Positions 17,313 through 59,401 of a stretch of 64,000 nt of DNA are shown in pieces. Where the stretch lies: positions 171,662 through 235,661 of the forward strand of contig JALMLS010000336.1 of assembly GCA_038496445.1 (NCBI GenBank). The letters are read 5' to 3'. How positions within the stretch are numbered: the stretch's first letter is position 1; every line of letters begins with the position of its first letter. The position numbers and the translations under genes were made by a program. The DNA is from Trichosphaerium sp. ATCC 40318. Taxonomy: Eukaryota > Protista > Tubulinea. The notes beneath the pieces are model-generated. The model did no database searches, was not told where the DNA came from, and was given only the letters and a program-made list of their open reading frames with translations.

Positions 17313-18462
17313 ATGTCAAAATATAAGTTAACTAGCCCAAATCATACGTATGTTCTAGACATTTCTTTAAAAACAAGTTAACAGCGTTGGTAGTGCGCCA
17401 AATAGCATTTTGGACCTTCCTATAGAGCTTTTAGCATTTATTTTACGACAAACAACAAAAGCGCGATTTGCAGCTTGTCAAACATGCCATCACCTTGCTT
17501 CTATCATTCACGACATTATTGGATACGACACAGTGATAATTTCAACTGTTGACCAAGTAAAAGCAGTTTTAAAGCATGCTAGCACTCTACGACATACGAA
17601 AATAACACTTGACAACAAACTCTTTTCAGATGAAATTGTCAAGCAGTTTTCAGGTGCTCACACAATAGATGTATCTCTGGCTAGACAGATAACAGATGAA
17701 GGGATTAGATCACTTTCAGGAGTTCATACAATAGATATAAGCTGTTGTAGGAGTATAACTGATGAAGGAATTAAGTCACTTTCAGGAGTTCATACAATTG
17801 ACCTTGGTTACACTTTAGTAACAGATGAAGGGCTTAAGGCACTGTCTGGTGTTCACACCATTGTTCTTTTGCGTTGTGACCATATAACAGATGAAGGAAT
17901 TAAATCTCTTGCTGGTGTACATACAATCAATCTTGAGCGAACACCAGTTACAGATAAAGGGTTAGCAGCACTTTCTGGTGTTCATACCATTGATCTGTAT
18001 TTATGCGGAGGCATAACAGATGAAGGTATAAAATCACTAGCAGGTGCACATGACATTAGCCTTTGTGCCACTTCAGTAACAGACGAAGGCATCAAAGCAC
18101 TTTCCGGTGTTCATACCATTAATCTAAGTTACTGTCAAAATATAACAGATGAAGGTATCAAAGCACTGGCAGGAGTACATGAGATTTACCTCACAAGCAC
18201 TTCTGTAACAGATGAAGGTATAAAAGGTCTTGCAGGAGTTCACACCATTAGCGTCAGTGACACATCAGTAACAGACAAAGGTATCAAAGCACTGGCAGGA
18301 GTACATAAAATTCACCTTACAAGCACTGCAGTAACAGATGAAGGTTTACAAGCTCTTTCTGGAGTTCACACCATTTACCTTGACTATTGCCCAGGTGTAA
18401 CAGCTAAAGGTATAGAGGCTTTAGAACCGCCTGTTGATATAATATCAAAACAATTCAGTTAA
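17313..18462 (+). CDS. F-box + leucine-rich repeat protein (paralog B)
   Basis: Short exon MSKYKLTSPNH, intron, ILDLPIELL F-box, about 11 repeats of TDEGIKALxGVHTIxL. Confidence 0.85.
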
Positions 18463-21371: not shown

Positions 21372-23162
21372 TTAAAGAACATTGTTCTGTTTGGCTTTGA
21401 TGACTTTGATACGTTCCATCAAACTAAAACCAAGCTCTATTAACACACTTTTATCAATTTCATTAACTTTTGCGCCAACATCATTCATCAACTCTCCAAG
21501 TTCTTGTGCTCTTTCACTTTTAAAGCCCAACTTCATTAATATTAACTTCCAATCAGTCTCAACACTACCACTGGATTGGTTATCATGTAGCTGAGCGAAA
21601 CGTGTCTAAATAACTCTATTAATAAACGCACTACTGCAAAAGAATTAAACTTGTTAGAGATATGCCTTATTGATGTTGTCTGCAGAAATATGTGGTTTGT
21701 CCATCCATGATTGTTGCGGTACAACTCTGGCCAGGTTATCAGATGGCGAGCTTGTGTTTTTGTGCTTTTCATCAAGTATCTCACTGTGGTCTTGTAGTTC
21801 TTCAGACTATAATATCCATGAGTTGTATAGATTATTCAAGAGACGTACATCAGAGGAATATTCGTCGTGGTTTTGTTGTATTTCAAAAGTTTCAAGGGCG
21901 CTCTGAATCATGGCTAGATGTTCAGGAGCGTCTCCAAATTTAGTGTAATCATGATTGGGTTTAATAACAGACTTAGACCAGTACTTGTCTTTTGGGTCTT
22001 CCTTTAACTCTGTCCGCATCTCTTTCATATCATCTTTGGTTGACTAAATTATGAGTAAGAAAAAAAGAAAACAAAGAGTGTGTACCTGTTTGTAATTACT
22101 AAACTTCAACTTTTGTGGCTCTGATTGACCGCTCATATTGTTACCTGCTGTAAGCAGTCTGAAATCATGATAAATTGCCAAGGAATGAGTCTGTTTAATG
22201 GCAAAGTCGAGGTATTTTCCAGGTAGTTTTAATGGTTTGTTTGATTTGAATTCCTTGATCCATTTACCCCAACCCCAACCAAACAAACAACCATCACGAT
22301 CAATAGCGAAAGATGACCATGAACCAGCATGAATAGATACAATGTTATTGAGTCCTTTAATTATGCCCTTTCCATACTTGTCATCAAAGCCCAGCCCAAG
22401 ACACCCATGCCAGCTGTATCCAAAAGAAAATACTTGCTTTGACTTGGTAAGAACAAGCACGTGAAAAACGCCAATAGCAATATCTGTAGCATTAGAGATA
22501 CTTGGAACACATGTAATCATCTTTGGTTTCAAGAATAGTGATTTATTACTACTTTCACTATTCGTCTCATTGTTTTGTGTTGCTCCCCATAGAAGGACAT
22601 TTCCTGCTGAAGTTACTGCTCCACTCACAAAGAAATTTGTTTGAATCTTCACAACTTTTTCAAGATCTGGAACGAGCGTGGGGGAGAACACCTTACTCTT
22701 ATCATACGAATGACCTAGCCCATCGTATTCATTGCTTCCCCAAGAGTAGACATGACCTGATTTCGATAAAGCCATACTTATACCATAGGCAGTTACTTGA
22801 GTTATATCGGTCAAGTTTGGAACACGTGTTGGTTTCAAAACTGTCTTAACCAAGAGAGACTTAAAGTTACCTAAACCCAATTCACCCTTGTAATTACTTC
22901 CCCACGCGTAAACGATACCATTCGAATCAACTGCGAGACTGTGGTGCCATCCAGCAGCGATACAGACAATATTTCGTAGAGATTGTATCGGTCTAGCTAT
23001 AGAGTTCTTTTCCTTATCGTTAGGATTACCCAATTGGTAGTAATGATTATCACCCCACGTGTACACAAAGCCATCGTCTGCTATCACCATTGAATGGTAA
23101 AAACATACAGCCAAACGGTTAACATACTGTAAATTATCCTCTGAAGACTGGGGTTCAGCCAT
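21372..23162 (-). CDS. RCC1-repeat protein with C-terminal SAM-like domain
   Basis: RCC1 repeats (HSLAVDSNGIVYAWGSNYKGELGLG); spliced last exon ends LIELGFSLMERIKVIKA. Confidence 0.8.
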
Positions 23163-23575
23163 AAACTTGCGCAAATGGTTGGGTTTTGGGTACTAAAGCA
23201 ATTTGGAGGCAAATCCTAAATAGACCAAAAAAAAAACTGTGTTTGGGGTTTAGTTCGAAACAAATGCAGCTGAGTAGAGACATTAGGGCAATCAAATAGA
23301 ATAACAAAAGTTATTGTCTTTACGATCGACAGAAACTCGTGGAAAGCGAAAAATTGTGAGTAAGAATCATTAAATCCTCATAATGCTAAAGCAAGATTGA
23401 CATGCAGTTTTGATAGCTTACTGGTTAAATTATTGGAATAAATACTCCTTGCTCTAATTGAGTGATTGTTATTGCAACAAAGTATTGTAACAGAATCAAC
23501 AACGGGATTGTTTAGTATAATAATAACGCAAAGTACATCATGGAAAAAATGGCTAACTTCCAGGAGTTTATTGTT

Positions 23576-35425: not shown

Positions 35426-35741
35426 GGACGTCTCTCTGCCCATTAATTAAAATTGTTTAAGTATTTATAATGTTGACATTTGTTATCTCCTCACACCCAT
35501 TTTATTGTTTTCTTGACACCAGTAAGAAAAAAAATACGACGCACTGTAGCATCATCTCGCGTTAAATACGGACTACTTATATCACGTGTTATATCACGTG
35601 AACGCCCTGAGTCAACTAAAATTCTTTAAAAAAAACCAGCACGTCATTTACTGAATCGTGCACAAAGAACAAAAAGGATAGTGACCCTTTTTAAAAAAGT
35701 CAGAACCGAACCACTAGCGCAACACTTAACGACACATTAGG

Positions 35742-38700
35742 ATGCGTTTTCTTGTTCTTCTCGCTGTATTATCAGCGCTATCGATAACTGTTAGCGGTAA
35801 TAATGAAGAAATATGTGGTAATAGTCAACTATCAAACGCCATTTGCTTCAATACTGCGAGGTAAGCTAAAACAACTATTTTCCGTAATACTTAGCTTCGT
35901 GTTCTTAACGAAATCTTGTTAGTACAACGGACCTTTTTGATAGAAGTCTGATTACTGCACGTATTATTACAAGTCAAGGTTGTGCTTGTACTGGATGGCT
36001 TATTGGAGACCGTGGCGATTTCATAACGAATCACCATTGTTGGTCTAATTTTCTTTGCAAGGGGTTTGTACTTTGTTACTTTCTCTCATTTTTACTGACC
36101 CGTCTTTCTTAGGTCTGCTGCGAATAATGCAGATGTTGCTGCTGCAAGTTATGAGTTCAGTTGCCATCAACCTACTTGCGGTAGTGCTAATCCAGCAGGA
36201 TCTGTTCCAGCTGCTTGTACTACATGGGCTTCCGCAGGAGCAACTGTACGCTTTAGAAACATGTTTAACATTCAAGTCAAAATTTGATAGTTTTTTGACT
36301 TTTGTCGTGTAGATTATTGACCAAGACGCCGGATTGGATTACGTACTTATTAACTTACCTGGTAACGCCGCTTTAACTTACAACGGACAATTGATATCAA
36401 CAAACGTAAACGTTGGAGAAGTGCGTAGAAAGTCGAGGACGTTATGTTCGACTAACCAATGTTAGCAAATCTTTATTTCTCAGCATCCAGCTCGTCGCGC
36501 TAGAGAGATTTCGAATGTTAACGATGCTGGAACTAGAGTTAGTGTTCAATCTGTAAACGAAATTAATGTGATGGGTGGCGCTGCTGCAATGTACGCCAAC
36601 GTGACGATTAAACCTCCTTTAACACTGCTAGTGGCTATGATGCTGATACTGAAGGCGGAAGCTCGGGCTCTCCAGTTGTGAGAAGAGCAGATTGGGTACT
36701 GACTATACTATGATAAGTTCGATTATTAACTTTTTAAATAGCGTGCTGTTGCTATCCACCATGCCAGGTCAAACCAAAACAACCCGTGCTGGAACAGAGG
36801 TACACCTGCAAATGATACAATACAGCTAAATATGCTTCTAGGTATTCCAATGTGGCGTATTAGAAACCTTCTTGATTCTAGAGGAGTGAACACTGCCAAT
36901 TATTTAAGTGACTTAGCTGGTGGCGCTTTTGCGTGGGGCGACCCTCATTACACAACTTTCGATGGAAGAAAGCATCATTTCCAAGGATTGGGTACTTTCC
37001 ATCTCGTCATCTCAGAACACAACAAATATTATCTTCAATCTAAAACTGCAAACAATGCCATTTGGCCAAGTGCTACTGTCAACCATGAAGTACGTTATCA
37101 TCACTGATCCTTCTTACTCAGCCACAAGAACCTTTTTTTTTTTATTGATTTATCACGTGATTTTTTTTTTGAATTTTATCACGTGATTTTTAATTTTGTT
37201 TGTTAGATTGGATTGGGATATGAGATTGATGGAAATGATGTTTTTGTTGCTGTCAAGGCAATCAAAGATGGTGAAGTATGCTATGGTTTTGATGTTATTC
37301 ATCAATGTGAAAAGTCGTAAGTTACCTCTTGTATGATGTCGCAAAAACTCACTTTCTTTTTAGTTTATTCGACCAAATATACTTCAGTCAAACCATTTCG
37401 GCAAGGACTGTGACAAGAGATGGATTCACTGCCACTGTAAATCAAGCCAATGGCAAACATTATGTATTTTTCAGATTCACAACAGGTAGCCTCCATTCTT
37501 TGAGTAGATGACGAACTAATGTACTTTGTAGGAGCAACAATGAAGATAACAATAAATCATAGAGATAATGATTGTTGGATGAATGTTGAACCAAAGGTTC
37601 CTGGTTCGTTTTATGGACGCACTGAAGGTCTTCTCGGAACATGGGATGATAATACAAACAATGATTACACAAAGAAAGGAACAACAACAATCGTACCTCA
37701 TGCTGAATTTGCTGAATCATGTACACTATTTTTCACTTGTTTAACTTTCAGTTACTTAATGCTTATTTAGACCGATTGGAGAAAGGAGAACCAAATGTAT
37801 TGGCTTGCAAAACAGCTGAAGAGACATTTATTGATCCAAAGTTCAAAGGATTGATTGGATTGACACTCGAAGGCGCCAACCAAGAGTGTACATAACTTTT
37901 TCTTACTCAACACTTTTCCTAATACTGTTACAGGGATTGATGTTGCCAATCAAGCATGTCGTCGTGTGAGAGATGAAGAAGATAGAAAAGCATGTATATT
38001 TGATGTCGCTCATACTCAAAATGTTGAATTTGCTCAACAAGACATTCTAATAAACACAAGTACGTCGTTTGGATAATAGAAAGGAAGGACTCGCTTTTGA
38101 CATTGTGGCTTAGGATGTCCTAATAATTGTAACGGTCGCGGTTTCTGTATTCAAGGAAGATGTAATTGTTTACTTGGATTTTCTGGACCAGATTGTAGTG
38201 AAAGTACGTGAACAGTTTTTCTTTGGAACCTTATAATTGTTAGTTGCCGAATGTCCAAATTGTAACAAAGAGACTGGTTTTTGTGTTGCTGGACGTTGTG
38301 TATGTCGTCCAGGATACTTGCCACCTAATTGTGATAAACGTATAACAATATGTGACTTGAAACCATTCCCTGATCTTCCAGAACCTATTGTCACTTCAAT
38401 ACCCGTCAGAGGAGGTACTACCCTTTACTTCACAATGTGACTTGTGTTTACAGAATCCTAGGAATCAAGGTGTTTGTCACTGTTCCATACTTCACCAAGG
38501 GAACCACAATTCTTGATTTTAAACCTTTTGAAAAACTTGAGAGCCTTTCTGATTGTGCCAATCGTTTCGCTTCAAACCCTCTTGAAGTCGATTCTAAAAA
38601 TGAAGTACGTATAATAGTTTATCACTTCTGGCATCTAATAAATGTCATAGCCAAAATGGGAGTATGCACCTGACGCAACATACCCAGGAGCTGTATCAGG

Positions 38701-39438
38701 AGACTTTGCTGGATACCAACACTCACAGTACGTAACACCTGTACTTTTTGAACACTTAAGCTAATAAATAACTTTAGGCGTTGGAATGTTGTTCCAAGAA
38801 ATTGTCGTACTTTGTACTACTCTGCATTCTTTGATGAACAAACATTGGAACGTTGTAGATTCGAAGGAAGTATATACGTTAACTATGCATCTCCTGTTGA
38901 TAGTGGCAACATTAACAAAGGTTTTGATATCAAAGACTTCAAGATGAGTGTTGAACGTAAGTATCAACAATTAAGTAAGCAAAAAGATTGCATTCTAACA
39001 CCTTTGTTTAGCTAAGCAACAAGATCCAACACAACTAACAATCAACTTGTCACCAAAGGGTATTCTTCAATCACGTGTACCTGCTACTGCAGCGGATAAT
39101 CTTCGTACTGCTGTATCAAAGGCATATGCTGTAAGTCCAAATGATGTATCTGTCACTGTTGGTAAAGGAAACGACTTCCATGTATCAGTTGATGGCGCCA
39201 CACATGTTGAAGCAGGAGCTACAGAGTATATTATCTTATTGATGAGTAATCATGGATTGAAAGTAGACAGTGGTGCGCAACCAAAACATATTGGTATACA
39301 GTGATGCTTACTAACAATTGCTTTTTAGGATCACACTTCCTCACAGTCTCAGATACCCATACTGTTCAATCAAGCGCTACTACAACGTCATATGCTATAC
39401 TCATATTGATGATGGTATTGATAGCTTCATTGTTGTAG
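35742..39438 (+). CDS. Trypsin-like peptidase-vWD-EGF GPI-anchored protein, copy 2
   Basis: MRFLVLLAVL signal; ITNHHC / LDY / DTEGGSSGSPV; GDPH at 36937-36948; EGF repeats (CPNNCNGRG); GPI-like end SSATTTSYAILILMMVLIASLL*. Confidence 0.9.
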
Positions 39439-40223
39439 TTCAAATAAAGTCAACACGTTTTACTTTGTTAACATGTAACTTCTTGAAGTAAAAGCCACTG
39501 TACTCAAGTAATGCAAGTTTGATTGCTGCATAGTGTCCTCGATATTTAAAATGCAGCAATAAGTTTTACGGATTCTGCAAAGGGCTGATTACAAGTTGTT
39601 TGGGTAGTTTAGATTCAAACAAAAATTGCATAATAGGCGCTCAAAAACAAGCCATAACAAAAAACCAGGAAACTTCTAAAGCAAATTGATAACGGGTTGG
39701 TTGTACTGTTACATGACAGCATGGCGTTATAAAAATATGCAGCCAGGTGCAAGTCCGAGTGGCTTGCCAAACACAAAGGATCTGTGAATGTTCATGAATG
39801 CATATTCGCGGTTTTGGGTACCCGAATAAAGATGTCTTGTACGTACTTACAAAATCCTCAAGGGTGTCTTTTTCGGTGGTTGAGAACAAGGAAAGAATAG
39901 GTACTTCCATACCCAACTTGCCATTCGCTTAAAGCTTGTGAATCGTTATCTTTGGATAGAGTTGACCCAATGATTTCCAAGCGTTCAACTTGGGTGTAGT
40001 GGTCTTATTAGTATCGTCTCACATCCATTTCACTGCTTTCTTGTCAAAATGTAAAAAACCCCGCCACACATAAGAGAGCGCTACAAGTGCAATATATACA
40101 TCGCGCAGATCACGTGTTTAATCACATGAGTCAAATAATATTTACTGAACCACGCACAAAAAGGAGCGAGCCATTTTATAATCACAGCCTTTTAACTAGC
40201 GCAACACTTAACGACACATTAGG

Positions 40224-43200
40224 ATGCGTTTTCTTGTTCTTCTCGCTGCGTTATCAGCGCTATCGATAACTGTTAGCGGTAATAATGAAGAAATATGTGG
40301 TAATAGTCAATTTACGAACGCCATTTGCTTCAATACTGCGAGGTAAGCTAAAACAACTATTTTCCGTAATACTTAGCTTCGTGTTCTTAACGAATTATCT
40401 TGTTAGTACAACGGACGTTTTCGATAGAAGTCTGATTACTGCACGTATTATTACAAGTCAAGGTTGTGCTTGTACTGGATGGCTTATTGGAGACCGTGGT
40501 GATTTCATAACGAATCACCATTGTTGGTCTGATGGTCTCTGCAAAGGGTTCGTATTCCTTCTACTTTTATATTTCATATCTAACGAAGCCTTTAGGTCTG
40601 CTGCGAGTAATGCAGACGTTGCTGCTGCAAGCTACGAGTTCAATTGTCACCAACCTACTTGTCTTAGTGCCAACCCATCAGGATCTACTCCAGCTGCTTG
40701 TACTGTATGGGGATCCGCAGGAGCAACTGTACGTTTGGGAAAACTGGTTCGAATTCAGAACTTGCTGACTTTCTTTGTTGGCATAGATCATTGACCAAGA
40801 TGCAGGCTTAGATTACGTACTTATTAACTTACCTGGTAACGCTGCTTTAACTTACAACGGACAATTGATATCAACAAACGTAAACGTTGGAGAAGTGCGT
40901 GGGAAGAAATACGTTGAGTATCTACTTACAAATATATAGCAAATCTTTATTTCTCAGCACCCAAGACGTCGTGCTAGAGAGATTTCGAATGTTAACGATG
41001 CTGGAACTAGAGTCAGTGTTCAATCTGTAAACGAAGTTAATTTCATGGGTGGCGCTGCAGCAATGTACGACAACTGTGACAAGTAAACCTCCTGTAACAT
41101 TTCTAGTGGTTATGATGCTGATACTGAAGGCGGAAGCTCGGGCTCTCCAGTTGTGAGAAGAGCAGATTGGGTACTGACTATACTATGATAAGTTCGATTA
41201 TTAACTTTTTAAATAGCGTGCTGTTGCTATCCACCATGCCAGGTCAAACGCAGCTAATCCACAATGTTGGAATAGAGGTATAAAAATACAGTTTTACTTA
41301 CTTCAGCTAAGTATGCTTGCTTAGGTGTTCCAATGTGGCGTATTAGAAACCTTCTTGATTCTAGAGGAGTAAACACTGCCAATTATTTAAGTGACTTAGC
41401 TGGCGGTGCTTTGGCGTGGGGCGACCCTCATTACACAACTTTTGATGGAAGAAAGCATCATTTCCAAGGATTGGGTACTTTCCATCTCGTCATCTCAGAA
41501 CACAACAAATATTATCTTCAATCTAAAACTGCAAACAATGCCATTTGGCCAAGTGCTACTGTCAACCATGAAGTACGTTAACATCGCTGAACTCATTCAC
41601 TTTGAAAAACAAAACCATTTTTTTTGATCACGTGATTTTTTTTTTTTGGTTTTTATCACGTGACTTTTAATTTTGTTTGTTAGATTGGATTGGGATATGA
41701 GATTGATGGAAATGATGTTTTTGTTGCTGTCAAGGCAATCAAAGATGGTGAAGTATGCTACGGTTTTGATGTTATTCATCAGTGTGAAAAGTCGTATGTT
41801 GTTATGTGAAAGATGTCTCACTCATTTTTTCATTTAGTTTGTTCGACCAAATATACTTCAGTCAAACCATTTCGGCAAGAACTGTGACAAGAGATGGATT
41901 CACTGCCACTGTCAATCAAGCAAATGGCAAACATTATGTATTTTTCAGATTCACAACAGGTATTTATTCTGATTCAATTGTGCTGAGCTAATGTACTTTG
42001 TAGGAGCAACAATGAAGATAACAATAAATCATAGAGATAATGATTGTTGGATGAATGTTGAACCAAAGGTTCCTGGTTCGTTTTATGGACGTACTGAAGG
42101 TCTTCTCGGAACGTGGGATGATAATACAAACAATGATTACACAAAGAAAGGAACAACAACAATCGTACCCCATGCTGAATTTGCTGAATCATGTACACAC
42201 TATTTTTCCTTGTTTAACTTTCTGTTACTTAATGCTTATTTAGACCGATTGGAGAAAGGAGAACCAAATGTATTGGCTTGCAAAACAGCTGAAGAGACAT
42301 TTATTGATCCAAAGTTCAAAGGATTGATTGGATTGACACTCGAAGGCGCCAACCAAGAGTGTACGTAACTTTTTCTTACTCAACACTTTTCCTAATACTA
42401 CTTACAGGGATTGATGTTGCCAATCAAGCATGTCGCCGTGTGAGAGATGAAGAAGATAGAAAAGCATGTATATTTGATGTCGCTCATACTCAAAATGTTG
42501 AATTTGCTCAACAAGACATTCTAATAAATACAAGTAAGTTTGCAAGAAGGAATGACTTGTAGTTGATATTTACTTAGGATGTCCTGATAATTGTAATGGA
42601 CGTGGTTTCTGTATTCAAGGAAGATGCAATTGTTTACTTGGATTTTCTGGACCTGATTGTAGTGAAAGTACGTGAAGTGTCTTTTGTGTGAAACTAACGA
42701 ATTGTTAGCTGAATGTACTAATTGTAACAAAGAGACTGGTTATTGTGTTGCTGGACGTTGTGTATGTCGTCCGGGATACTTACCACCAAATTGTGATAAA
42801 CGTATAACAATATGTGACTTGAAACCATTCCCTGATCTTCCAGAACCTATTGTCACTTCAACTTATGTCAAAGGAGGTACTTACCTTTGCTTCACAATGT
42901 GACTTGCGTTTACCGAATACCAGGTATCAAGGTGTTTGTCACTGTTCCATACTTCACCAAGGGAACCACAATTCTTGATTTCAAACCTTTTGAAAAGCTT
43001 GAAAGCCTTTCCGATTGTGCCAATCGTTTCGCTTCAAACCCTCTTGAAGTCGATTCTAAAAATGATGTACGTTTTGGTTGTACCCGTACAGAAACTAACA
43101 ATATTTTAGCTCAGATGGGAGTATGCACCTGATGCCACATATCCAGGAGCTGTATCAGGAGACTTTGCTGGATACCAACACTCACAGTACGTAACACCTG

Positions 43201-43916
43201 TACTTTTAGTAGCCACAGCTGTACCATGTATGAACACCAAAGCTAATATGAATAACTTCAGGCGTTGGAATGTTGTTCCAAGAAATTGTCGTACTTTGTA
43301 CTACTCTGCATTCTTTGATGAACAAACATTGGAACGTTGTAGATTCGAAGGAAGTATATACGTTAACTACGCATCTCCTGTTGATAGTGGCAACATTAAC
43401 AAAGGTTTTGATATCAAAGACTTCAAGATGAGCGTTGAACGTAAGTATCAACAACAAGCGGCTTGTATTCTAACAACTTTGTTTAGCTAAACAACAAGAT
43501 CCAACACAACTAACAATCAACTTGTCACCAAAGGGTATTCTTCAATCACGTGTACCTGCCACTGCAGCGGATAATCTTCGTACTGCTGTATCAAAGGCAT
43601 ATGCTGTAAGTCCAAATGATGTATCTGTCACTGTTGGTAAAGGAAACGACTTCCATGTATCAGTTGACGGCACCTCACATGTTGAAGCTACAGCTACAGA
43701 GTATATCATATTATTAATACTGAGTAATCATGGATTGAAAGTAGACAGTGGTACGCAACCTAACATGAATCTGGTATACTGAGTCTTACTGATAATTGCT
43801 TTTTAGGATCACACTTCTTCACAGTCTCAGATACCCATACTGTTCAATCAAGCGCTACTACAAACTCATATGCTATACTCATATTCATGATGGTATTGAT
43901 AGCTTCATTGTTGTAA
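40224..43916 (+). CDS. Trypsin-like peptidase-vWD-EGF GPI-anchored protein, copy 3
   Basis: Same exon structure and motifs as copy 2; tandem direct duplicate. Confidence 0.9.
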
Positions 43917-44749
43917 CTCTCAAATAAATTCTACATCACACAAGTTCCTTTGCTTACACTATAGCAATGTATTGTTTTTGCAAAAAAGCCTAGTCTTTGT
44001 TCGTTCTTTACCAACACTTCTACAACAAAGTTGTTTAATAAACTATGGATAAGGTATTCAGGGTATTTCGCAAGACAGAAGCCAACAAGTTGCATTTATT
44101 TCGTTTGTGGATCATTACCAGGTTAAAAAGGTTCACAGATTTCAGTATGTGTCTTTAGTCAAAAGACAATACGAGAAGGATCATAGTAGAAACACTTACA
44201 CAACAGTCCACGATACTCACGTCCAGTTCCTAATGCGAGTTTTAAATCCGAATATTTTAGGATTCAGTGAAGTAGTTTTAATGGTTTTTTTTTTGAAAAA
44301 TGTTTAACACAAGCTTGGATTTTCGTGGCATGTGAACTCTTGTCGGGTTTGAGCATTCTCGATATTCCTACAGGACAATAATTTATCAGCTAATGTGCTA
44401 AGGGTAACAATCCAATGGACGCAAAAGTTAAGTATGAACCCCTTCTCAACAAAAACACGAGGCTGACTAGCCGTGTACAAGACAAATAAGCGTACTTCCG
44501 TTACCCGACCTGTATTCACCAAACATTTGTGAGTCTTAAACTCTTGACGATATTCACCCAATAGAATACATAAGGTGCGTTGAATAAAAACGAGATTTTG
44601 CGCAAGAAAAAAAAGGCAACACGTGAATGTTGCTTATTTGCAGGCAATAATTCGTAAAAAAAGAAGAACGGGGTGAAATGTGACTCGCATTTAGTACACA
44701 GTTGGCTATCAAAGTTGTTAAATCCAAACAACTAGCGCAACTATTCAGA

Positions 44750-47700
44750 ATGCGCTCTTTCTTACTGCTAGTTGTATTATCAGTGCTTACTATAGGCGTA
44801 ACTGGTAGTAGCGAGGAAATATGTGGTACCAGTCAACTGACTAACGCCATATGCTTCAATACTCTCAGGTAAGCCATACATAGCACTGAGTTAGAATTTT
44901 CCTTCTGACATTCTTCGTCTTAGCAACTCGGACCTTTTTGATAGAAGTTACATCGCTGCGCGTGTAACAACTGCTCAAGGTTGTTCATGTACTGGATGGC
45001 TTATTGGAGATATGGGACATTTTATTACGAACCACCATTGTTGGTCTAGTTTTGGTTGCAAAGGGTTTGTAGTACTTTGTGCTTTATTTATCTAACGAAC
45101 TTCTTAGGTCAGCAGCGACTAATGCAGACGTTGCTGCTGCAACGTACGAATTCTTTTGCCATCAGCTCACTTGTGCTGCTGCAAATCCAGCTGGATCTAC
45201 TCCAGCTTCTTGTACTACATGGGGAGCTGCAGGAGCAACTGTACGTGTAAATAGTTTAAAGAGTATTGTTATTGACTTTCTTCATTGACACAGATCATTG
45301 ACCAAGACGCTGGATTAGATTACGTACTTATTGACCTGCCTGGTAATCCCGCTCTTACATACAACGGACAATTGATTGCGACCAATGCAAACATTGGCGA
45401 AGTGCGTATAGCTACGCTAAGATACCTAACTAAACATCAACAGCAAATTGTTATTTCTCAGCACCCACGTGCTCGTGCCAGAGAGATTTCGCACGTCAAT
45501 GACGCAGGAAACAGATGTAGCGTTCAATCCGTTACAGAAGTCAATGTTATGGGTGGTGGCGCAGCAATGTACGATGGGTGATTAAGAGTTTTTCAAATAC
45601 ACTAATACTATGTTGCAGCGGCTATGATTGCGACACAGAAGGCGGCAGCTCAGGCTCTCCAGTTGTGAGAAGAACTGACTGGGTAATACGCTTTAACAGG
45701 ATTTCTATTTTACTAATTAATTAAATCATAAAGCGTGCCGTTGCTATTCATCATGCTAGATCCGACCCAGCCAATCCATCATGTTGGAACAGAGGCACTC
45801 AAACATCACACTATTTTATAAACTAAACAGCTACTAGGTGTTCCAATGTTTCGTATTAGAAACCTTCTTGATTCGAGAGGCATCAATACGATAGGATACT
45901 TGACTAATGCTCCGGGTGGTGGACTCTCATGGGGCGATCCTCATTATACAACTTTTGATGGAAGAAGGCATCATTTCCAAGGATTGGGTACTTTCCATCT
46001 CGTCATCTCAGAACACAACAAGTTTTATCTTCAATCTAAAACTGCAAATAATGCCATTTGGCCAAGTGCGACTGTTAACCACGAAGTACGTTATCCTCCT
46101 TTGAAATCTCATTCACTTCGAAACAAATCCTGTTTTTTTATCAAACCACGTGTTTTTTTTTCTGTTGTATGCGATTTTTTTGTCACGTGATTGACTTTGT
46201 TTTTCACGTGATTTTTGAAAGTTGTTATTAGATTGGATTGGGATATGAGATTGATGGAAATGATGTTTTTGTTGCTGTCAAGGCAATCAAAGATGGTGAA
46301 GTATGCTACGGTTTTGATGTTATTCATCAATGTGAAAAGTCGTAAGTTACCTCTTGTATGATGTCGCAAAAACTCACTTTCTTTTCTTTTTAGTTTGTTC
46401 GACCAAATATACTTCAGTCAAACCATTTCGGCAAGGACTGTGACAAGAGATGGATTCACTGCCACTGTCAATCAAGCAAATGGCAAACATTATGTATTTT
46501 TCAGATTCACAACAGGTATTTATTCTCAAGATTGTGCTGAGCTAATGTACTTTGTAGGAGCAACAATGAAGATAACAATAAATCATAGAGATAATGATTG
46601 TTGGATGAATGTTGAACCAAAGGTTCCTGGTTCGTTTTATGGACGTACTGAAGGTCTTCTCGGGACATGGGATGATAATAGAAATAATGACTACACAAAG
46701 AAAGGAACAACAACAATCGTACCTCATGCTGAATTTGCTGAATCATGTACACACTATTTTTCCTTGTTTAACTTTGTGTTACTTAATGCTCATTTAGACC
46801 GATTGGAGAAAGGAGAACCAAATGTATTGGCTTGTAGACCAGCGAAAGAAACATTTATTGATCCAAAGTTCAAAGGATTGATTGGGTTGACGCTCGAAGG
46901 AGCTAATCCAGAATGTACGATAAAGAGTAGTCATCACAGTACTCAACTATTTCCCTAATACTGCTTACAGGGATTGATGTTGCCAACCAAGCATGCCGTC
47001 GTGTGAGAGATGAAGAAGATAGAAAAGCATGTATATTCGATGTCGCTCATACTCAAAATGTTGAATTTGCTCAACAAGACATTCTAATAAATACAAGTAA
47101 GTTTGCAAGAAGGAATGACTTGTTGATAATTGTGACTTAGGATGTCCTAATAATTGTAATGGACGTGGTTTCTGTATTCAAGGAAGATGCAATTGTTTAC
47201 TTGGATTTTCTGGACCAGATTGTAGTGAAAGTACGTGAACTCATATCTTTTGTGCAGAAACTAATGAATTTTTAGCTGAATGTACTGATTGTAACAAAGA
47301 TGGTGGGTACTGTGTTGCTGGACGTTGTGTTTGTCGTCCAGGATTCTTGCCACCAAATTGTGATAAACGTATAACAATATGTGACTTGAAACCATTCCCT
47401 GATCTTCCAGAACCTATTGTCACTTCAATACCCGTCAGAGGAGGTACTGCCACTTTCATTCTTGTTTGCTTCACAATGTGACTTGTGTTTACCGAATACT
47501 AGGTATCAAGGTGTTTGTCACTGTTCCATACTTCACCAAGGGAACCACAATTCTTGATTTCAAACCTTTTGAAAAGCTTGAGAGTCTTTCTGATTGTGCC
47601 AATCGCTTTGCTTCAAACCCTCTTGAAGTCGATTCTAAAAATGATGTACGTAAATCGTTAATCACTTACAGTATCTAATCAATTTCACAGCCAAGATGGG

Positions 47701-48490
47701 AGTATGCACCTGATGCCACATATCCAGGAGCTGTATCAGGAGACTTTGCTGGATACCAACACTCACAGTACGTAACACCACAGTACCACACTGTACCATT
47801 ATGAACACCAACGCTAATATGAATAACTTTAGGCGTTGGAATGTTGTTCCAAGAAATTGTCGTACTTTGTACTACTCTGCATTCTTTGATGAACAAACAT
47901 TGGAACGTTGTAGATTCGAAGGAAGTATATACGTTAACTATGCATCTCCTGTTGATAGTGGCAACATTAACAAAGGTTTTGATATCAAAGACTTCAAGAT
48001 GAGCGTTGAACGTAAGTATCAACAACAAGCGGCTTGTATTCTAACAACTTTATTTAGCTAAACAACAAGATCCAACACAACTAACAATCAACTTGTCACC
48101 AAAGGGTATTCTTCAATCACGTGTACCTGCTACTGCAGCGGATACTCTTCGTACTGCTGTATCAAAAGCATATGCTGTAAGTCCAAATGATGTATCTGTC
48201 ACTGTTGGTAAAGGAAACGACTTCCATGTATCAGTTGATGGCACCACACATGTTGAAGCAGGAGCTACAGAGTATATCATATTATTGATGAGTAATCATG
48301 GACTGAAAGTAGATAGTGGTGCGCAACCAAACGCGAACATATTGTATTCAGTGTGCTAATAACAATTGCTTTAGGATCACACTTCCTCACAGTCTCAGAT
48401 ACCCATACTGTTCAATCAAGTGCTACGACAAACTCATTTGCAGTATTCACCTTGATGATAATATTGATAGCTTATAGCTTGTTGTTGTAA
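44750..48490 (+). CDS. Trypsin-like peptidase-vWD-EGF GPI-anchored protein, copy 4
   Basis: Same architecture; the model needs a GC-AG intron at 45795-45837. Confidence 0.85.
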
Positions 48491-48573
48491 TCCTCAATAC
48501 ATTCAATATCACTCACCTCTAACCGAGTTCCTAAGTTCTTACAAACAGTATTATTGAACTTTTTTTATTGTAC

Positions 48574-49529: not shown

Positions 49530-50543
49530 ATGTCTAAAAGTAGTATTGTCGCAAAACAAAGGTAATAACGCTATACTGCCCTGTTCGCTAGTGTAACCGT
49601 CTTACTTAGTCCAATAAACATTGTGGAACTGCCTACAGAGATTTTAGCTGGTATTTTACGACGAACAACAACAACACGAGTTGCAGCTTGTCAAACGTGT
49701 CACAGGCTTGCATCCATCATACACGATATTGTAGGATACTCCAAAATTAGAATTAAAAGTCTGGAGCATGCAAAAGCACTATTAAAACACTCCAGCACTC
49801 TCCGTCATACAAAAATCGTAATTGTGCATAACGAATGTAAACAAATTGATTGCGTTGTAAAAGAATTAGCTGGTGTTCATACTATAGACCTTGTGTGCAC
49901 TGTAGTGACAGATGCAAGTGTCAAACTACTTGCTGGAGTTCATACTATTGCCCTTGGAATGTGCACGCATATAACAGATGAAGCTATCAAACCCTTAGCA
50001 GGTGTTCACTCCATAGACCTTTCCAATACCCTTGTGACAGATGAGGGTATCCAGGCACTTGCTGGAGTCCATACCATTGACCTTCATGGTTGTAAGAATA
50101 TAACAGATCAAGGTGTCAAAAAACTTGCTGGTGTTCATACTATTCATCTTCAATGGACACCAGTAACAGATGAAGGCATTAAACCATTAGCTGGCGTTCA
50201 TACCATTTTGCTTCGCGGATGCGAGGTAACGGATAACAGCATCAAAGAACTCTGTGGTGTTCACGAAATTGATCTTTGTGGAACTGAGGTAACGGATGTA
50301 GGTATCAAAGCACTTGCTGGAGTTCATACAATCCTGCTTCACAACTGCCAACATGTAACAGATGAATGTCTCAAGTCGCTTTCAAGTGCTCATGAGATTG
50401 TCCTCTCCAGAACCAACATAACAGATGAAGGTATCAGACATCTTTCTAATGCTTATAATGTAGATGTTTGTTATACTTTAGTAACAGAAGAAGGTGTTGA
50501 AGAATGGCTAAGACATGTTCATACTGTGTACAGCGACTTTTAG
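49530..50543 (+). CDS. F-box + leucine-rich repeat protein (paralog C)
   Basis: Short exon MSKSSIVAKQ, intron, VELPTEIL F-box, AGVHTIxL repeats homologous to 17313-18462. Confidence 0.85.
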
Positions 50544-55513: not shown

Positions 55514-56748
55514 TTATACTTCAGAGTATTCATCTCTCTTTGTGACTAAACAACTAGTGAGAATTCTTGTTCTTGCTAACACAGAAAAAACATACCTAGT
55601 CCGACTAGAAACATTACACCATCTTTGCAAAGCCCAGGAATGCTGAACCAGAAGTCCTATTTTGAAAAAGTAAATATCACGTGGTAACCTTTTTACGACA
55701 TAAAGTTTAATTGGAGTTTGGATAACTGAGCAAGATACGCACTTTGTGAGGAATTTTCTCTCCATTTTTCCTAACAATATTGAACGTAACTGTACCAGCT
55801 ACGTATGCAATGACACCAAGCAAGAGTACAATAAGCATAATGGAACCAATACTTAATCCTTTCTTTTTGTTGTTATCATCTCCTTTGCCGCCACCGCCAC
55901 CACCTCCACTTGTGGGGCTGCCGCCGCTATTGGTCTTACAAGCGTGGATAGATGAGGCTGTCATTCTATAGTGAAGCCCTTCATTATCAAAGACTTGGAA
56001 ATTGGTCCATGCTAAAAGAAAACTATCAGCATGAAGCCAAAAAATGTGTCAAGCCAAACTGAATACCATCTGTTCCGCAAGATATTGTCACTAGTAACAA
56101 ATCATGTTAGATAAAAAAGTGGTTAAGTATGCTCTATGCACTTACGTTCAAAAGTTCGGTGTAGATAACCACCAGAGTAGCTCAGTTTAACACCTCCATT
56201 GTTATCAAGACCAATTGCTTGTTCTGTATCTATTGTACCAATCGAGTACTGAACAAACAATTAGACGAACTAAGCGAAGAAGAAAGAACAATCCAACAGA
56301 GTTCGATTCCATATCGAGAAATTTCGGAACATCTCCTTGGAAATATCACTGTACCATTGCTCCTTGAGCATTATATTGCCCCCACGCTTGACAACCAGCG
56401 AAGTATTGCTATGGCGTGGTCAGCAAACAGATTGAAAGCAAAATGTGACCAAAAGACGCACATTTTGGCAAAGAACGTTCGATTCTTTGCATATAGATAC
56501 GCGGTATTGGTATTTATCTTTCTACAATAGTAGTAAGTGGAATGTTCGCTTTTTTGTTCACTTACCCCTCCACCGCAGCCATCACACTTTACAGTACCGT
56601 ATCCGGTTACTAGCTTACCAATAAGCGCAGATAGATCATATTGTGACCCGTCTTGGGCTACTATCGACCTACAATCTGCGTATACCTTTGAAAGGCATAG
56701 TAGGCTTACAAATGCCACCAAGAAGAGTTGGTGTTGCGAGTACGACAT
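55514..56748 (-). CDS. ATG27 / cation-dependent mannose-6-phosphate receptor-like type I membrane protein
   Basis: Signal peptide; MRH motif QYDLSAL..Y.YRVSIC; TM GLSIGSIMLIV; cytosolic IPHKDFWFSIPGLCKDG; terminal YSEV sorting motif. Confidence 0.85.
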
Positions 56749-57421
56749 TTTCTTAATAGTATTCCAACTGTTTCTCGAAAATTGACGAAATTTTTCTCAA
56801 TTTGGAGCATCTAAATTTTACGGTATATCTTCTTGTAGTTGTAAGTGCTTATTATCTTGTGCTTCATTTGATTTCTTTTCATTTAAGGATCTCTTATATG
56901 AATTTGTTGGGGTCTGGTCAGCATCTTCTACGGGACTTACAGACCTTTGTTTTCTGTACGAAAGAATTGTAGTTGGATACAATCAGTGACGCCTAAAAAT
57001 ACAACTGGGAAAGTTCGAAACGAAAAAGTTCGAAAAAACTACTTAAAAAAATTACAGACTAGCAAGGTTTCTTCTAATTGTTTCTGCTGGGGAGTGCTGA
57101 CAACATGTGCAAGTGTTATGTAAAAGATACTACTAATCGTGACAGTGAAGCTAGTCGGATTCTTGTGCCAATCAAAATGTAGCAAGCACGGCCATTTTCT
57201 TTGCGAAGTACTTTACATCCTTGTTCTATGTTGCTACTGTACCAGTAGACTCATACTCAGTTAGAAGAACATATCTAGTTCAGAGGATGGAAATTGCGTA
57301 GACTAAGCTGAGTCGAAAGATGTTTTTTAAAACGCTCTTAAAAAGGAAACTGTAAAGAAAAAAAAAAGTTTGTTTCATTGAATTATTAACTTTATTTTCC
57401 CTCCAAACAAACAATAATTGT

Positions 57422-59104
57422 ATGGACAATACAGTAAATGATATTGACGATTGGATACCAGAACGCGTACTAAATAAAAGAACGTTGAAATCCGTACGAG
57501 CGAGAATAGTTTTTTGTTGACTATTTATACGCCTTAAAGGGCGCTATAGAGTATTTAGTAAAGTGGGAAGGTTGGAACGTTGAACACGCTACTTGGGAGG
57601 TAAGTATAACATTTTTTGGCTTTATATCGCTATAAACTACTTATTTCGCTCAAGCACGAAGACGACCTTGAATGTGACATACTTTTATGTAAATTCAACT
57701 TAGAACAGCGGAAAAAAGCTCAAACGTCAAAACAACAACGCAAACACAGCAACGACGCTCGTACTATACGTAAAAAGCATGAAAAACAGTTTGTATACTC
57801 ACGTGAGGCTATTTTCGGAAATCTTAATGTCCAGCAATCGAAAAAACAGAATCAAGAACGATCATACCAAGAAATATGGCAAAACATTGATCACTCGAAG
57901 ATGTTTTCAAAGTACCCTCGCAAAGGCGATTACATGCTTTCTTTTGAACCAACAGAACCAGAAAAGTACTTGCCTGTTCTAGCACAGTATGGGTTTGTAG
58001 TTATAAGAGTATTAAACAAAGAAGAGTGTGTTAAATCTCAAAAAGCACTTTTTGAAGAAGCCAATGAAGATGCTTGTTCTCATCAGGAAGTCAAGCTTGA
58101 TCGCTCAAAACCTTGTACATGGGAAACAAAGAACTGGCCTTCGGGTAGTAAGTATTTATTCAGACGACCTGCATTACATAAGGTAGCATTTGAGAATAGA
58201 ATAAAAAAACAATTTATCGGACTTTTTGTGAGATTCATGGAACAAAAAAGTTATGGACTACTATAGACTATTGGGGTGTTATGAGAGGAACAAAGAACCT
58301 TGATTTTGTTGGATCAGAAACTAAAAAAGAGAGACCCGCCTGGAAATTTAATCTTCAACTTCATTGGGACTTGAATCCATGGCAGTAAGAAATAGCCAAG
58401 TAATTCTCTGAACCAATTTGTAACGGTTTTTTTAAGGTACATGGAAGAAGTTACAGATGGCTTGACCGCAAGATACCAAGCTCTTATCGCTTTAGGTAAC
58501 GCACATACATTGAAAACTAATAATTGAATATTCAAGTATTAACTTGCAAATGATAGACGATTGCCCTGAAGAAGTTGGTGGATTTCTAACTGTTCCCGGA
58601 TCAACAAGGTTTTTGAACAAGTGGTAAGTTTTTTTTACCACGTGTTTTTGCTTAACCAAGATTTTTCAGGCGAAATACACATATTAAACCACATAATAAG
58701 AATATATTAACACGTGTACCGCCATCAGACCCAATACAACAGTACACGCAAAGAGTAAGATATTGTCCTTCTGAAAATTTTGTTGTACTTTTACCAGTGC
58801 TTCCTCTTTGTTGGGTTTGTGTTTACCGTTTTGTGTTTACCGTTTTGTATAGGTGCCCTTACGTGCAGGAGAGATGGTTATTTGGAATTCAGGACAAGCA
58901 CACGCTAACTATGGAAACACTTCGAATAAAATGAGATTGATTCAATTTGTAAAGATGATACCTGCAAAAGATGAATGCTATATTCGTGAAAGGCGCACAG
59001 CAAAAAGAACACTTGACGAGATTCCTGAATATAAACCATATGTTGATAGACTTGGTCTTGATGATTTTGGACTTAAACTCTTTGGTTTAAAAGATTGGGA
59101 GTAA
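57422..59104 (+). CDS. Chromodomain + PhyH-like Fe(II)/2OG dioxygenase (frameshift at about 58209)
   Basis: Spliced N-terminus WIPERVLNKR..GAIEYLVKWEGWNVEHATWE; LHWD (HxD), YQALIAL, GGFLTVPGS, AGEMVIWNSGQAH, MRL. Confidence 0.8.
58819..58849. repeat. Intronic tandem duplication (GTGTTTACCGTTTT)x2
   Basis: Direct 14-bp repeat just before the acceptor at 58852. Confidence 0.7.
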
Positions 59105-59401
59105 CAACTACTGTTGTAACAGTTGGTACCCGAATGTAATGTCTCGGTGTAGGCACTACCGTCCTGTCACATTAATACAGCCAAACAGCTTCGATCCTGT
59201 ATTTGGACGCGTGAAACAATTTGGGTTCTTTGTACTAGGTAATTGGAGTTCGTTGGTGTATATGGAAAGACTAAATAAAATCAAAATCTCTTGTACAACA
59301 CAGCTATGTAACTTTTTTCCAAAGATGTTGGTAATCTAAGTAACTTTATGAGACCATTAATGACACTTTACTCGCTTTATTACTACTAAGTTAATTTATT
59401 C

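What the first reader, a model, noticed from the sequence alone, without database searches (positions are those of the whole stretch)
57422..59104. Chromodomain fused to a PhyH-type Fe(II)/2-oxoglutarate dioxygenase: candidate unconventional chromatin-modifying enzyme
Seen: splicing out two short introns (57494-57539, 57600-57654) gives a canonical chromodomain with an intact aromatic cage (W...KWEGW...TWE), which the ORF track misses. It is followed by a basic linker and a dioxygenase with HxD (LHWD), distal His (QAH) and a putative 2OG-binding Arg (MRL). Established: chromodomains read methyl-lysine, and the known chromatin 2OG oxygenases are JmjC, TET/JBP and AlkB, while PhyH enzymes are usually metabolic. 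Inference: this is a reader-catalyst fusion that hydroxylates or demethylates histones, or modifies nucleic acid at methyl-marked chromatin.
Basis: partly seen in the sequence, partly recalled or inferred. Interest (0 to 1): 0.8.

Follow-up and report, generated by a model that had tools for sequence, protein, structure and literature searches.

The report
Chromodomain–PhyH oxygenase gene, frame broken
A protist gene really does join an HP1-like methyl-lysine reader to a complete PhyH-type iron/2-oxoglutarate oxygenase, a combination found in no relative or paper, but this copy is out of frame by one base in a run of seven A's and its function is untested.

Summary
Removing introns 57494-57539 and 57600-57654 gives a chromodomain (Pfam Chromo E 1e-14; best solved match human HP1alpha). 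All three aromatic-cage positions are Trp. One uninterrupted exon then runs from the last chromodomain helix through a basic linker into the dioxygenase, so the fusion does not depend on gene prediction.

The oxygenase belongs to a small protist-only PhyH subfamily. Its Fe ligands H281, D283 and H375 and its 2OG Arg R386 are intact.

- Four more introns are needed.
- The frame is broken. As written it stops at TAG 58264-58266, before the catalytic residues.
- Colinearity with all relatives needs one extra base in the A7 run 58203-58209.
- A 50-nt GT..AG "intron" that also restores frame would delete 17 conserved residues and is unlikely.
- I could not tell an assembly error from a true frameshift, because no reads were available.

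None of 80 relatives carries a chromodomain. Separate clades carry other nuclear or RNA modules: MJ1316, and DEK_C plus a TFIIS N-terminal domain. This modestly supports a nuclear, macromolecule-directed role, although every solved structural neighbour with a known substrate acts on small molecules.

The scan noted the same architecture on other DNA of this genome. One of those copies was reported intact with seven exons.

The parts
57422..57493 (+). Exon 1: start codon and first chromodomain strand, including cage residue W11 (57452-57454)
   Evidence: First ATG after the in-frame stop at 57353. Part of the Pfam Chromo match.
57494..57539 (+). Intron 1, 46 nt, GTACGA..TTAAAG
   Evidence: Read-through stops at 57518-57520. 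Removing it gives a gap-free Chromo match.
57540..57599 (+). Exon 2: chromodomain core GAIEYLVKWEGWNVEHATWE with cage residues W33 (57564-57566) and W36 (57573-57575)
57600..57654 (+). Intron 2, 55 nt, GTAAGT..CTCAAG
57655..58384 (+). Exon 3: last chromodomain helix, basic linker and the N-terminal half of the dioxygenase up to the HxD motif (H281 at 58362-58364, D283 at 58368-58370). It contains the frame break.
   Evidence: One ORF links the chromodomain helix to the dioxygenase. It is colinear with the family profile when read through the A-run with one extra base.
58203..58209 (+). A7 run, the longest homopolymer in the coding sequence. The conserved reading needs eight bases here (ATA AAA AAA CAA as given).
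   Evidence: Model B scores 431 bits against 381 for the spliced alternative.
58264..58266 (+). TAG that ends the frame as the sequence is written. The product would be about 248 aa and lack all catalytic residues.
58183..58232 (+). Rejected 50-nt 'intron' (GTAGCA..GTGAG). It restores frame but deletes 17 conserved residues.
   Evidence: In P0001 these residues are 143-159, which lie in two confident helices.
58385..58436 (+). Intron 3, 52 nt, GTAAGA..TTTAAG
   Evidence: The junction is gap-free against the family profile.
58437..58495 (+). Exon 4
58496..58556 (+). Intron 4, 61 nt, GTAACG..GATAG
58557..58623 (+). Exon 5: DDCPEEVGGFLTVPGS motif
58624..58669 (+). Intron 5, 46 nt, GTAAGT..TTTCAG
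58670..58754 (+). Exon 6
58755..58852 (+). Intron 6, 98 nt, GTAAGA..GTATAG
58853..59104 (+). Exon 7: distal His H375 (58901-58903), 2OG-binding Arg R386 (58934-58936), family C-terminal motif LFGLKDWE and the stop codon
59274..59279 (+). AATAAA, a candidate polyadenylation signal 170 nt after the stop
   Evidence: Sequence only; not tested.

Best explanation
The locus is a seven-exon nuclear gene of an intron-rich unicellular eukaryote. Its intended product is about 441 aa: an N-terminal HP1-type chromodomain (residues about 8-58), a basic linker of about 65 residues, and a complete Fe(II)/2-oxoglutarate dioxygenase. The dioxygenase belongs to a small protist-restricted subfamily of the PhyH superfamily, marked by an N-terminal F-P/K-R/K-Y-P motif and a C-terminal L-x-G-L-x-x-W.

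Shown: the domains, the exon structure, the physical fusion within one exon, intact metal and 2OG ligands, and the absence of a chromodomain in every relative found.

Also shown: this copy is one base short in an A7 run, so as written it is truncated before the catalytic core. Apart from this break I found no in-frame stop, lost splice site or changed catalytic residue. It is therefore either a homopolymer assembly error or a very recent frameshift allele or paralogue of an otherwise functional gene family. Earlier notes report other copies in this genome.

Inferred mechanism: the chromodomain docks on a methyl-lysine mark of chromatin (H3K9me-like). It holds the oxygenase there, which uses Fe(II), 2OG and O2 to hydroxylate a nearby macromolecular substrate, either a chromatin protein side chain or a nucleic-acid base or sugar.

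My odds: real fusion gene 0.9; this copy intact in the organism (sequence error) about 0.5; chromatin- or nucleic-acid-directed substrate about 0.4.
For: Chromodomain: Pfam Chromo E 1e-14; CBX5 E 1e-12 with the three cage positions aromatic.

Fusion: exon 3 is one ORF from the chromodomain helix into the dioxygenase. By my estimate from base composition (about 6.8% stops per codon), 66 linker codons stay open by chance about 1% of the time. The upstream neighbour is divergent (ATG 56748 on the minus strand) and the downstream neighbour convergent, so no other plus-strand gene could supply these exons.

Dioxygenase: model B matches a profile built from the 47 fetched relatives of at least 300 aa end to end at 431 bits. 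It is 55.6% identical to P0001 over 322 aa. 22 of 33 and 17 of 22 relatives hit Pfam PhyH. The AF2 model of P0001 has pLDDT 91 and matches PhyH-type structures at Z 15-22. The family profile aligns the VPGS, distal His and Arg motifs with SnoK. H, D, H and R are invariant or nearly so.

Nuclear hint: MJ1316 in P0027 and P0042. DEK_C plus Med26/TFIIS_N are fused in P0078, and the corresponding gene lies 120 bp upstream on the same strand in Pythium oligandrum. The accessory domains fall in separate clades.

Frame break.
Against: No RNA run was listed, so splicing and expression are unverified. As given, the reading frame is broken, and this copy may be dead. The two closest solved structures (Gig2, YbiU) have no known substrate, and nearly all the others above Z 14 are small-molecule enzymes; no PhyH-type enzyme is known to me to act on chromatin. 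The accessory-domain evidence is guilt by association from distant clades (29-34% identity). The DEK_C/Med26 neighbour is absent within 4 kb in Pythium insidiosum. Chromodomains can also mediate other protein contacts: the chloroplast SRP43 chromodomain is among the hits.
Confidence: 0.5

Rival explanations
1. This copy is a genuine frameshift allele or young pseudogene. The A7 run is real, and the product is a roughly 248-aa chromodomain plus linker plus inactive stub. Function resides in the other copies in the genome. This rival does not exclude the family-level reading above.
For: The sequence as given stops at 58264-58266. Three 3.8-kb paralogous protease genes in the same window show non-triplet indels only in intron-like stretches, so the assembly is not obviously riddled with coding frameshifts. 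Earlier notes mention other frame-cut nuclear genes in this genome (unverified).
Against: This is the only defect I found across 441 codons and six splice-site pairs, and it lies in the longest homopolymer of the coding sequence, the classic site of sequencing error. All catalytic and cage residues are intact.
Confidence: 0.4
2. The frame is restored by splicing a 50-nt intron (58183-58232), giving a 424-aa protein (model A).
For: GT..AG boundaries, a length typical of this gene's introns, and an open frame.
Against: It deletes 17 residues that are conserved in relatives (the AFxNRxxxxxYxxF block). In the closest relative these residues form two confident helices. It scores 50 bits less against the family profile, with a clean gap. 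The donor GTAGCA and acceptor GAG differ from the six homology-supported introns, which have GTAAG or GTAC/GTAAC donors and A/C/T-AG acceptors.
Confidence: 0.05
3. The oxygenase is an ordinary small-molecule (metabolic or secondary-metabolite) hydroxylase. The chromodomain is a lineage-specific shuffled module used for protein-protein contact or has no chromatin role.
For: Among solved structures, the nearest neighbours with a known substrate act on small molecules: PtlH, SptF, KanJ, TlxI, AsqJ, SnoK, EctD and PHYH. Earlier notes list many odd chromodomain fusions in this genome, suggesting promiscuous shuffling (unverified).
Against: The cage is fully aromatic and the domain is about 44% identical to HP1alpha by my count. 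The linker is basic. Independent clades of the same subfamily carry RNA or chromatin modules rather than metabolic ones. I saw no PTS1-like C-terminus or presequence by eye.
Confidence: 0.25
4. Two separate genes (a mini chromodomain gene and a dioxygenase starting at an internal Met, for example M126), or a chance chromodomain-like string.
For: A Met lies just before the conserved F-x-K-Y-P motif, and many relatives start 10-50 residues before that motif.
Against: There is no stop between the chromodomain helix and the dioxygenase in exon 3. Chromo at E 1e-14 is far beyond chance. Earlier notes report the same architecture at other loci of this genome (unverified).
Confidence: 0.03

Closest known systems
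Reader-plus-oxygenase chromatin enzymes of the JmjC class (from my own knowledge, e.g. KDM4 with Tudor/PHD, PHF8/KDM7 with PHD)
   Same: One polypeptide joins a methyl-lysine reader to an Fe(II)/2OG oxygenase with an HxD/E...H triad.
   Different: The catalytic domain here is PhyH-type, not JmjC. No JmjC structure is among the 50 best fold matches, and ALKBH3 reaches only Z 9.8. No activity has been shown.
PhyH-superfamily small-molecule dioxygenases (PHYH 2a1x, PHYHD1 3obz, PtlH 2rdn, SnoK 5epa, KanJ, SptF, AsqJ, EctD)
   Same: Same fold and the same H-x-D...H...R(+11) ligand pattern. The sequence profile reaches SnoK at E 3e-5, and structure matches are Z 15-20.
   Different: Only 10-21% identity. 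Those enzymes are single-domain and act on CoA esters, terpenoids, aminoglycosides or amino acids. This one has a chromodomain and family-specific N- and C-terminal motifs.
Gig2 (Candida albicans, 6akz) and YbiU (Yersinia pestis, 4rgk), the DUF1479/Gig2-like family
   Same: These are the best structural matches to the closest relative's model: Z 22.4 and 22.2 with 284-295 residues aligned, including the N-terminal extension.
   Different: Pfam Gig2-like is not met by sequence; the only hit is one relative at 15.9 bits against a cut-off of 27. Identity is 12-13%. I know of no established substrate for either, and the paper search gave none, so they add no functional clue.
HP1/CBX chromodomains (CBX5, CBX1, Drosophila HP1)
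   Same: About 44% identity to CBX5 by my count from the alignment, the same length, three aromatic cage positions, and the conserved TWE and C-terminal helix.
   Different: There is no chromoshadow domain or hinge, and all three cage residues are Trp. Binding specificity is untested.
Same-subfamily relatives with other accessory modules: Reticulomyxa filosa RFI_04399 (P0027, MJ1316 + PhyH) and P0078 (DEK_C + TFIIS N-terminal domain + PhyH)
   Same: The same catalytic subfamily (34% and 29% identity, same C-terminal motif), with an N-terminal targeting module and a linker placed before the oxygenase.
   Different: The modules differ and sit in different clades. None is a chromodomain, and none has been characterised.

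Membership tests
Chromodomain (Pfam Chromo PF00385, HP1/Polycomb type) | Sequence match above Pfam's gathering score | tested here: met
   54.6 bits against a cut-off of 25.1, E 1e-14, profile positions 1-47 of 53
Chromodomain (Pfam Chromo PF00385, HP1/Polycomb type) | Three-residue aromatic cage at the HP1 positions | tested here: met
   In the phmmer alignment, W11, W33 and W36 fall in the columns of the Tyr in EEEYVVEKV and of the Trp and Phe in LKWKGF of human CBX5. The assignment of those residues as the cage (Y20, W41, F44) is from my own knowledge.
Chromodomain (Pfam Chromo PF00385, HP1/Polycomb type) | Binding of methyl-lysine peptides | not testable with these tools
   Needs peptide arrays or ITC
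PhyH superfamily Fe(II)/2OG dioxygenases (Pfam PF05721) | Pfam PhyH match above the gathering score | tested here: inconclusive
   The window protein could only be scanned exon by exon; exon 7 alone gives 13.4 bits against a cut-off of 22. The closest relative P0001 gives 34.1 bits. 22 of 33 and 17 of 22 relatives match at the E-value limits used. The window protein matches a profile of those relatives at 431 bits.
PhyH superfamily Fe(II)/2OG dioxygenases (Pfam PF05721) | H-x-D ... H iron triad | tested here: met
   H281, D283 and H375 lie in invariant or nearly invariant family columns. The distal His aligns with that of SnoK.
PhyH superfamily Fe(II)/2OG dioxygenases (Pfam PF05721) | 2OG C5-carboxylate Arg about 11 residues after the distal His | tested here: met
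   R386 is H375+11 and is nearly invariant (R313 of P0001). The comparison with H264/R275 of human PHYH is from my own knowledge.
PhyH superfamily Fe(II)/2OG dioxygenases (Pfam PF05721) | Double-stranded beta-helix fold of PhyH type | tested here: met
   Tested on the closest relative only (P0001, 55.6% identical). AF2 pLDDT is 91. Foldseek gives probability 1.0 to PtlH, SptF and KanJ. VIA gives Z 15-22 to Gig2, YbiU, TlxIJ, AsqJ, PHYHD1 and PHYH.
PhyH superfamily Fe(II)/2OG dioxygenases (Pfam PF05721) | An uninterrupted reading frame encoding the whole domain | tested here: not met
   As given, the frame stops at 58264-58266. One extra base in the A7 run 58203-58209 is needed.
Gig2-like / DUF1479 (Pfam PF07350) | Pfam Gig2-like match above the gathering score | tested here: not met
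   No relative reaches it. The best is P0076 at 15.9 bits against a cut-off of 27. Only the structural resemblance is strong.
Known chromatin or nucleic-acid 2OG oxygenases (JmjC, TET/JBP, AlkB) | Catalytic domain of one of these families | tested here: not met
   Pfam finds none in any relative. The best AlkB-type structure is Z 9.8, and no JmjC, TET or JBP structure is in the top 50.

The most novel reading that the evidence does not exclude
This protist-only PhyH subfamily may be a so far unrecognised class of nuclear, macromolecule-directed Fe/2OG oxygenases that different lineages aim with different modules: a chromodomain here, MJ1316 in foraminifera-like organisms, and DEK_C/TFIIS-N in oomycetes. 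On that reading the chromodomain version would be a non-JmjC, non-TET, non-AlkB enzyme that oxidises histones, other chromatin proteins or nucleic acid at methyl-lysine-marked chromatin.
Probability: 0.3. Interest if true: 0.8.

Novelty: new variant of a known kind. Interest (0 to 1): 0.58.

Why it matters
All chromatin-acting 2OG oxygenases known to me belong to the JmjC, TET/JBP or AlkB families. A PhyH-type enzyme physically tethered to an HP1-like reader would add a fourth catalytic lineage and possibly a new chromatin or RNA modification chemistry. The same catalytic subfamily has independently picked up RNA-end-binding and transcription or chromatin modules in other protists. That turns a single odd fusion into a family-level hypothesis that can be tested with recombinant proteins. 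The caveat found here also matters for anyone who wants to clone the gene: this copy is one base out of frame, so another copy, or a sequence confirmed by reads, should be used.

Tried and rejected
- RNA evidence: the look-up of sequencing runs listed no run.
- Exon 3 in the search for homologous proteins gave nothing because of the length window.
- Exon 3 in metagenome contigs gave nothing.
- Atlas feature and shape searches added only generic PhyH clusters.
- Paper searches (chromodomain + phytanoyl-CoA dioxygenase; Gig2 + PhyH; DUF1479/YbiU; PhyH + chromo + architectures) found nothing relevant.
- Rfam found nothing in the window.
- My first gene model, with eight exons and a 50-nt intron at 58183-58232, was rejected once relatives showed that the stretch is coding.
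- A programmed -1 slip or transcriptional slippage on A AAA AAA was considered. Any one-base loss from an A8 run automatically produces this heptamer in frame, so the pattern is no independent evidence. I rate it below 5%.
- I did not fold the window's own full-length protein. The spliced, frame-corrected sequence has no reference, and I did not type long sequences. The closest relative was folded instead.
- The search of earlier findings by sequence returned nothing.

Full report
**Gene model**

Reading 57400-59130 in three frames and locating GT..AG boundaries gives a plus-strand gene from ATG 57422 to stop 59102-59104. The start is the first ATG after an in-frame stop at 57353. The neighbour upstream is divergent (ATG 56748, minus strand) and the one downstream is convergent (a membrane-protein-like ORF ending near 59402, minus strand). 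No other plus-strand gene could therefore own the first exons.

**Chromodomain**

Joining 57422-57493, 57540-57599 and the start of 57655 onward gives a 59-residue stretch.
- It hits Pfam Chromo at E 1e-14, 54.6 bits against a cut-off of 25.1.
- It hits 75 solved chromodomains. The best is human CBX5/HP1alpha at E 1e-12, about 44% identical by my count.
- In that alignment W11, W33 and W36 occupy the three cage positions of HP1alpha, which I know as Y20, W41 and F44.
- Retaining either intron gives an early stop.

**The fusion is physical**

Exon 3 is a single ORF. It encodes the last chromodomain helix (HEDDLECDILLCKFNLEQ), a 65-residue linker (15 K/R, pI 10.2) and the start of the dioxygenase. 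From the window's base composition I estimate that 66 linker codons would stay open by chance only about 1% of the time.

**The dioxygenase and the frame break**

I searched exon 3 against 1.84 billion representative proteins. It gave only 52 hits, all through residues of about 50-176 and none through the chromodomain helix or the first part of the linker. Their alignment conserves PAxxxxAFxNRxxxxxYxxF...LxxSIDxWGxxRGT.
- In the window the first half of this block (ALHKVAFENRIKK) is in frame 0. The second half (IYRTFCEIHGTKKLWTTIDYWGVMRGT) is in the -1 frame.
- The switch is at the A7 run 58203-58209.
- Read with one extra base (X at the break), the 441-aa model B matches a profile of the 47 fetched relatives of at least 300 aa from residue 64 to the last residue at 431 bits.
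- My first model removed a 50-nt GT..AG stretch (58183-58232). It scores 381 bits with a clean 17-residue gap.
- Those 17 residues are P0001 143-159, two helices in blocks of pLDDT 89-99.
- The putative intron has atypical GTAGCA and GAG ends compared with the six homology-supported introns.

I conclude that the gene has seven exons and that the sequence as written is out of frame. It stops at TAG 58264-58266, before HxD.
- The break lies in the longest homopolymer of the coding sequence.
- I found no other in-frame stop, lost splice site or changed catalytic residue.
- Three 3.8-kb paralogous genes elsewhere in the window differ by non-triplet indels only in intron-like stretches. This is a weak sign that the assembly is not full of coding frameshifts.
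- With no reads available, I cannot decide between a homopolymer error and a recent frameshift allele.

**Family membership**

Model B is 55.6% identical over 322 aa to P0001, an MMETSP transcript, and 29-45% identical to most other full-length relatives. Named sources include Reticulomyxa filosa, Arcella intermedia, Pythium species and Porphyridium purpureum.
- Most relatives reach Pfam PhyH: 22 of 33 and 17 of 22.
- H281 and D283 (LHWD), H375 (QAH) and R386 (MRL, 11 residues after the His) sit in invariant or nearly invariant columns.
- The family profile aligns the VPGS, His and Arg region to SnoK at E 3e-5.
- The AF2 model of P0001 has pLDDT 91.
- By Foldseek it matches PtlH, SptF, KanJ, TlxI, AndA and SnoN.
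- By exhaustive alignment it matches best Gig2 (6akz, Z 22.4) and YbiU (4rgk, Z 22.2). PhyH-type small-molecule oxygenases follow, with PHYHD1 and PHYH at Z 15-16.
- No JmjC, TET or JBP structure is in the top 50, and ALKBH3 is at Z 9.8.

The protein is thus a PhyH-superfamily enzyme of a small, uncharacterised protist subfamily. It is not a member of the known chromatin oxygenase families.

**Is the architecture known?**

None of the 80 relatives fetched has a chromodomain, either by Pfam or by direct phmmer with the window's chromodomain. Four paper searches found nothing. Earlier notes of this scan report the same architecture at other places in this genome, and one follow-up called its copy an intact seven-exon gene. 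I could not inspect those copies.

**Clues to function**

Other clades of the same subfamily carry N-terminal modules tied to nucleic acid or chromatin.
- MJ1316, an RNA cyclic-end recognition domain, is in Reticulomyxa P0027 (E 1.5e-8). P0042 carries a homologous N-terminus (pairwise E 1e-16 to P0027).
- DEK_C (E 2e-10) plus the TFIIS N-terminal/Med26 domain (E 3e-14) are in P0078.
- In Pythium oligandrum the DEK_C/Med26 gene lies 120 bp upstream of the PhyH relative on the same strand.
- That neighbour was not found within 4 kb in P. insidiosum.
- Weak C2HC/UBZ-like zinc fingers occur in P0012, P0016 and P0040.
- In a quick tree these modules fall in separate clades. The window protein pairs with P0001 at SH-aLRT 94, and the careful tree search did not finish.

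This pattern favours a nuclear, macromolecule-associated role for the subfamily. It is association only, it comes from distant relatives, and the structural neighbours with known substrates argue the other way.

**Verdict**

The architecture appears undescribed: a new variant of the known reader-plus-oxygenase design, built on a different catalytic family.

Noticed in passing
window 35669-48515: Three tandem copies of a gene of about 3.8 kb (82-89% DNA identity), with an exon/intron-like identity pattern. Non-triplet indels fall only in low-identity, intron-like stretches.
   Followed up: partly
window 22044-23174 (-): A large ORF with RCC1 repeats / RCC1-like domain (Pfam E 4e-69).
   Followed up: no
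window 17410-18462 (+) and 49623-50543 (+): LRR_6-rich ORFs. The second has a weak F-box-like N-terminus (E 1.6e-4).
   Followed up: no
window 56371-56748 (-): Divergent upstream neighbour that starts with a signal-peptide-like, Cys-containing N-terminus. It has no Pfam hit. About 670 bp separate the two start codons, which may be a shared promoter region.
   Followed up: no
L002 2797-6137 (Pythium oligandrum SPLM01000144.1): A DEK_C + Med26/TFIIS-N gene ends (TGA 4878-4880) 120 bp before the ATG (5001) of a PhyH relative on the same strand. In the metagenomic protein P0078 the two are one ORF, joined exactly at the downstream Met.
   Followed up: partly
P0027 (Reticulomyxa filosa RFI_04399) and P0042: Relatives of the dioxygenase carry an N-terminal MJ1316 RNA cyclic-end recognition domain, an unreported pairing as far as my searches went.
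   Followed up: partly
P0005, P0007, P0014, P0023, P0030, P0017, P0029 (N-termini): Several relatives share helical N-terminal extensions of about 75-100 residues. The two scanned (P0017 1-100, P0057 1-100) gave no significant Pfam match. This may be another accessory module.
   Followed up: no
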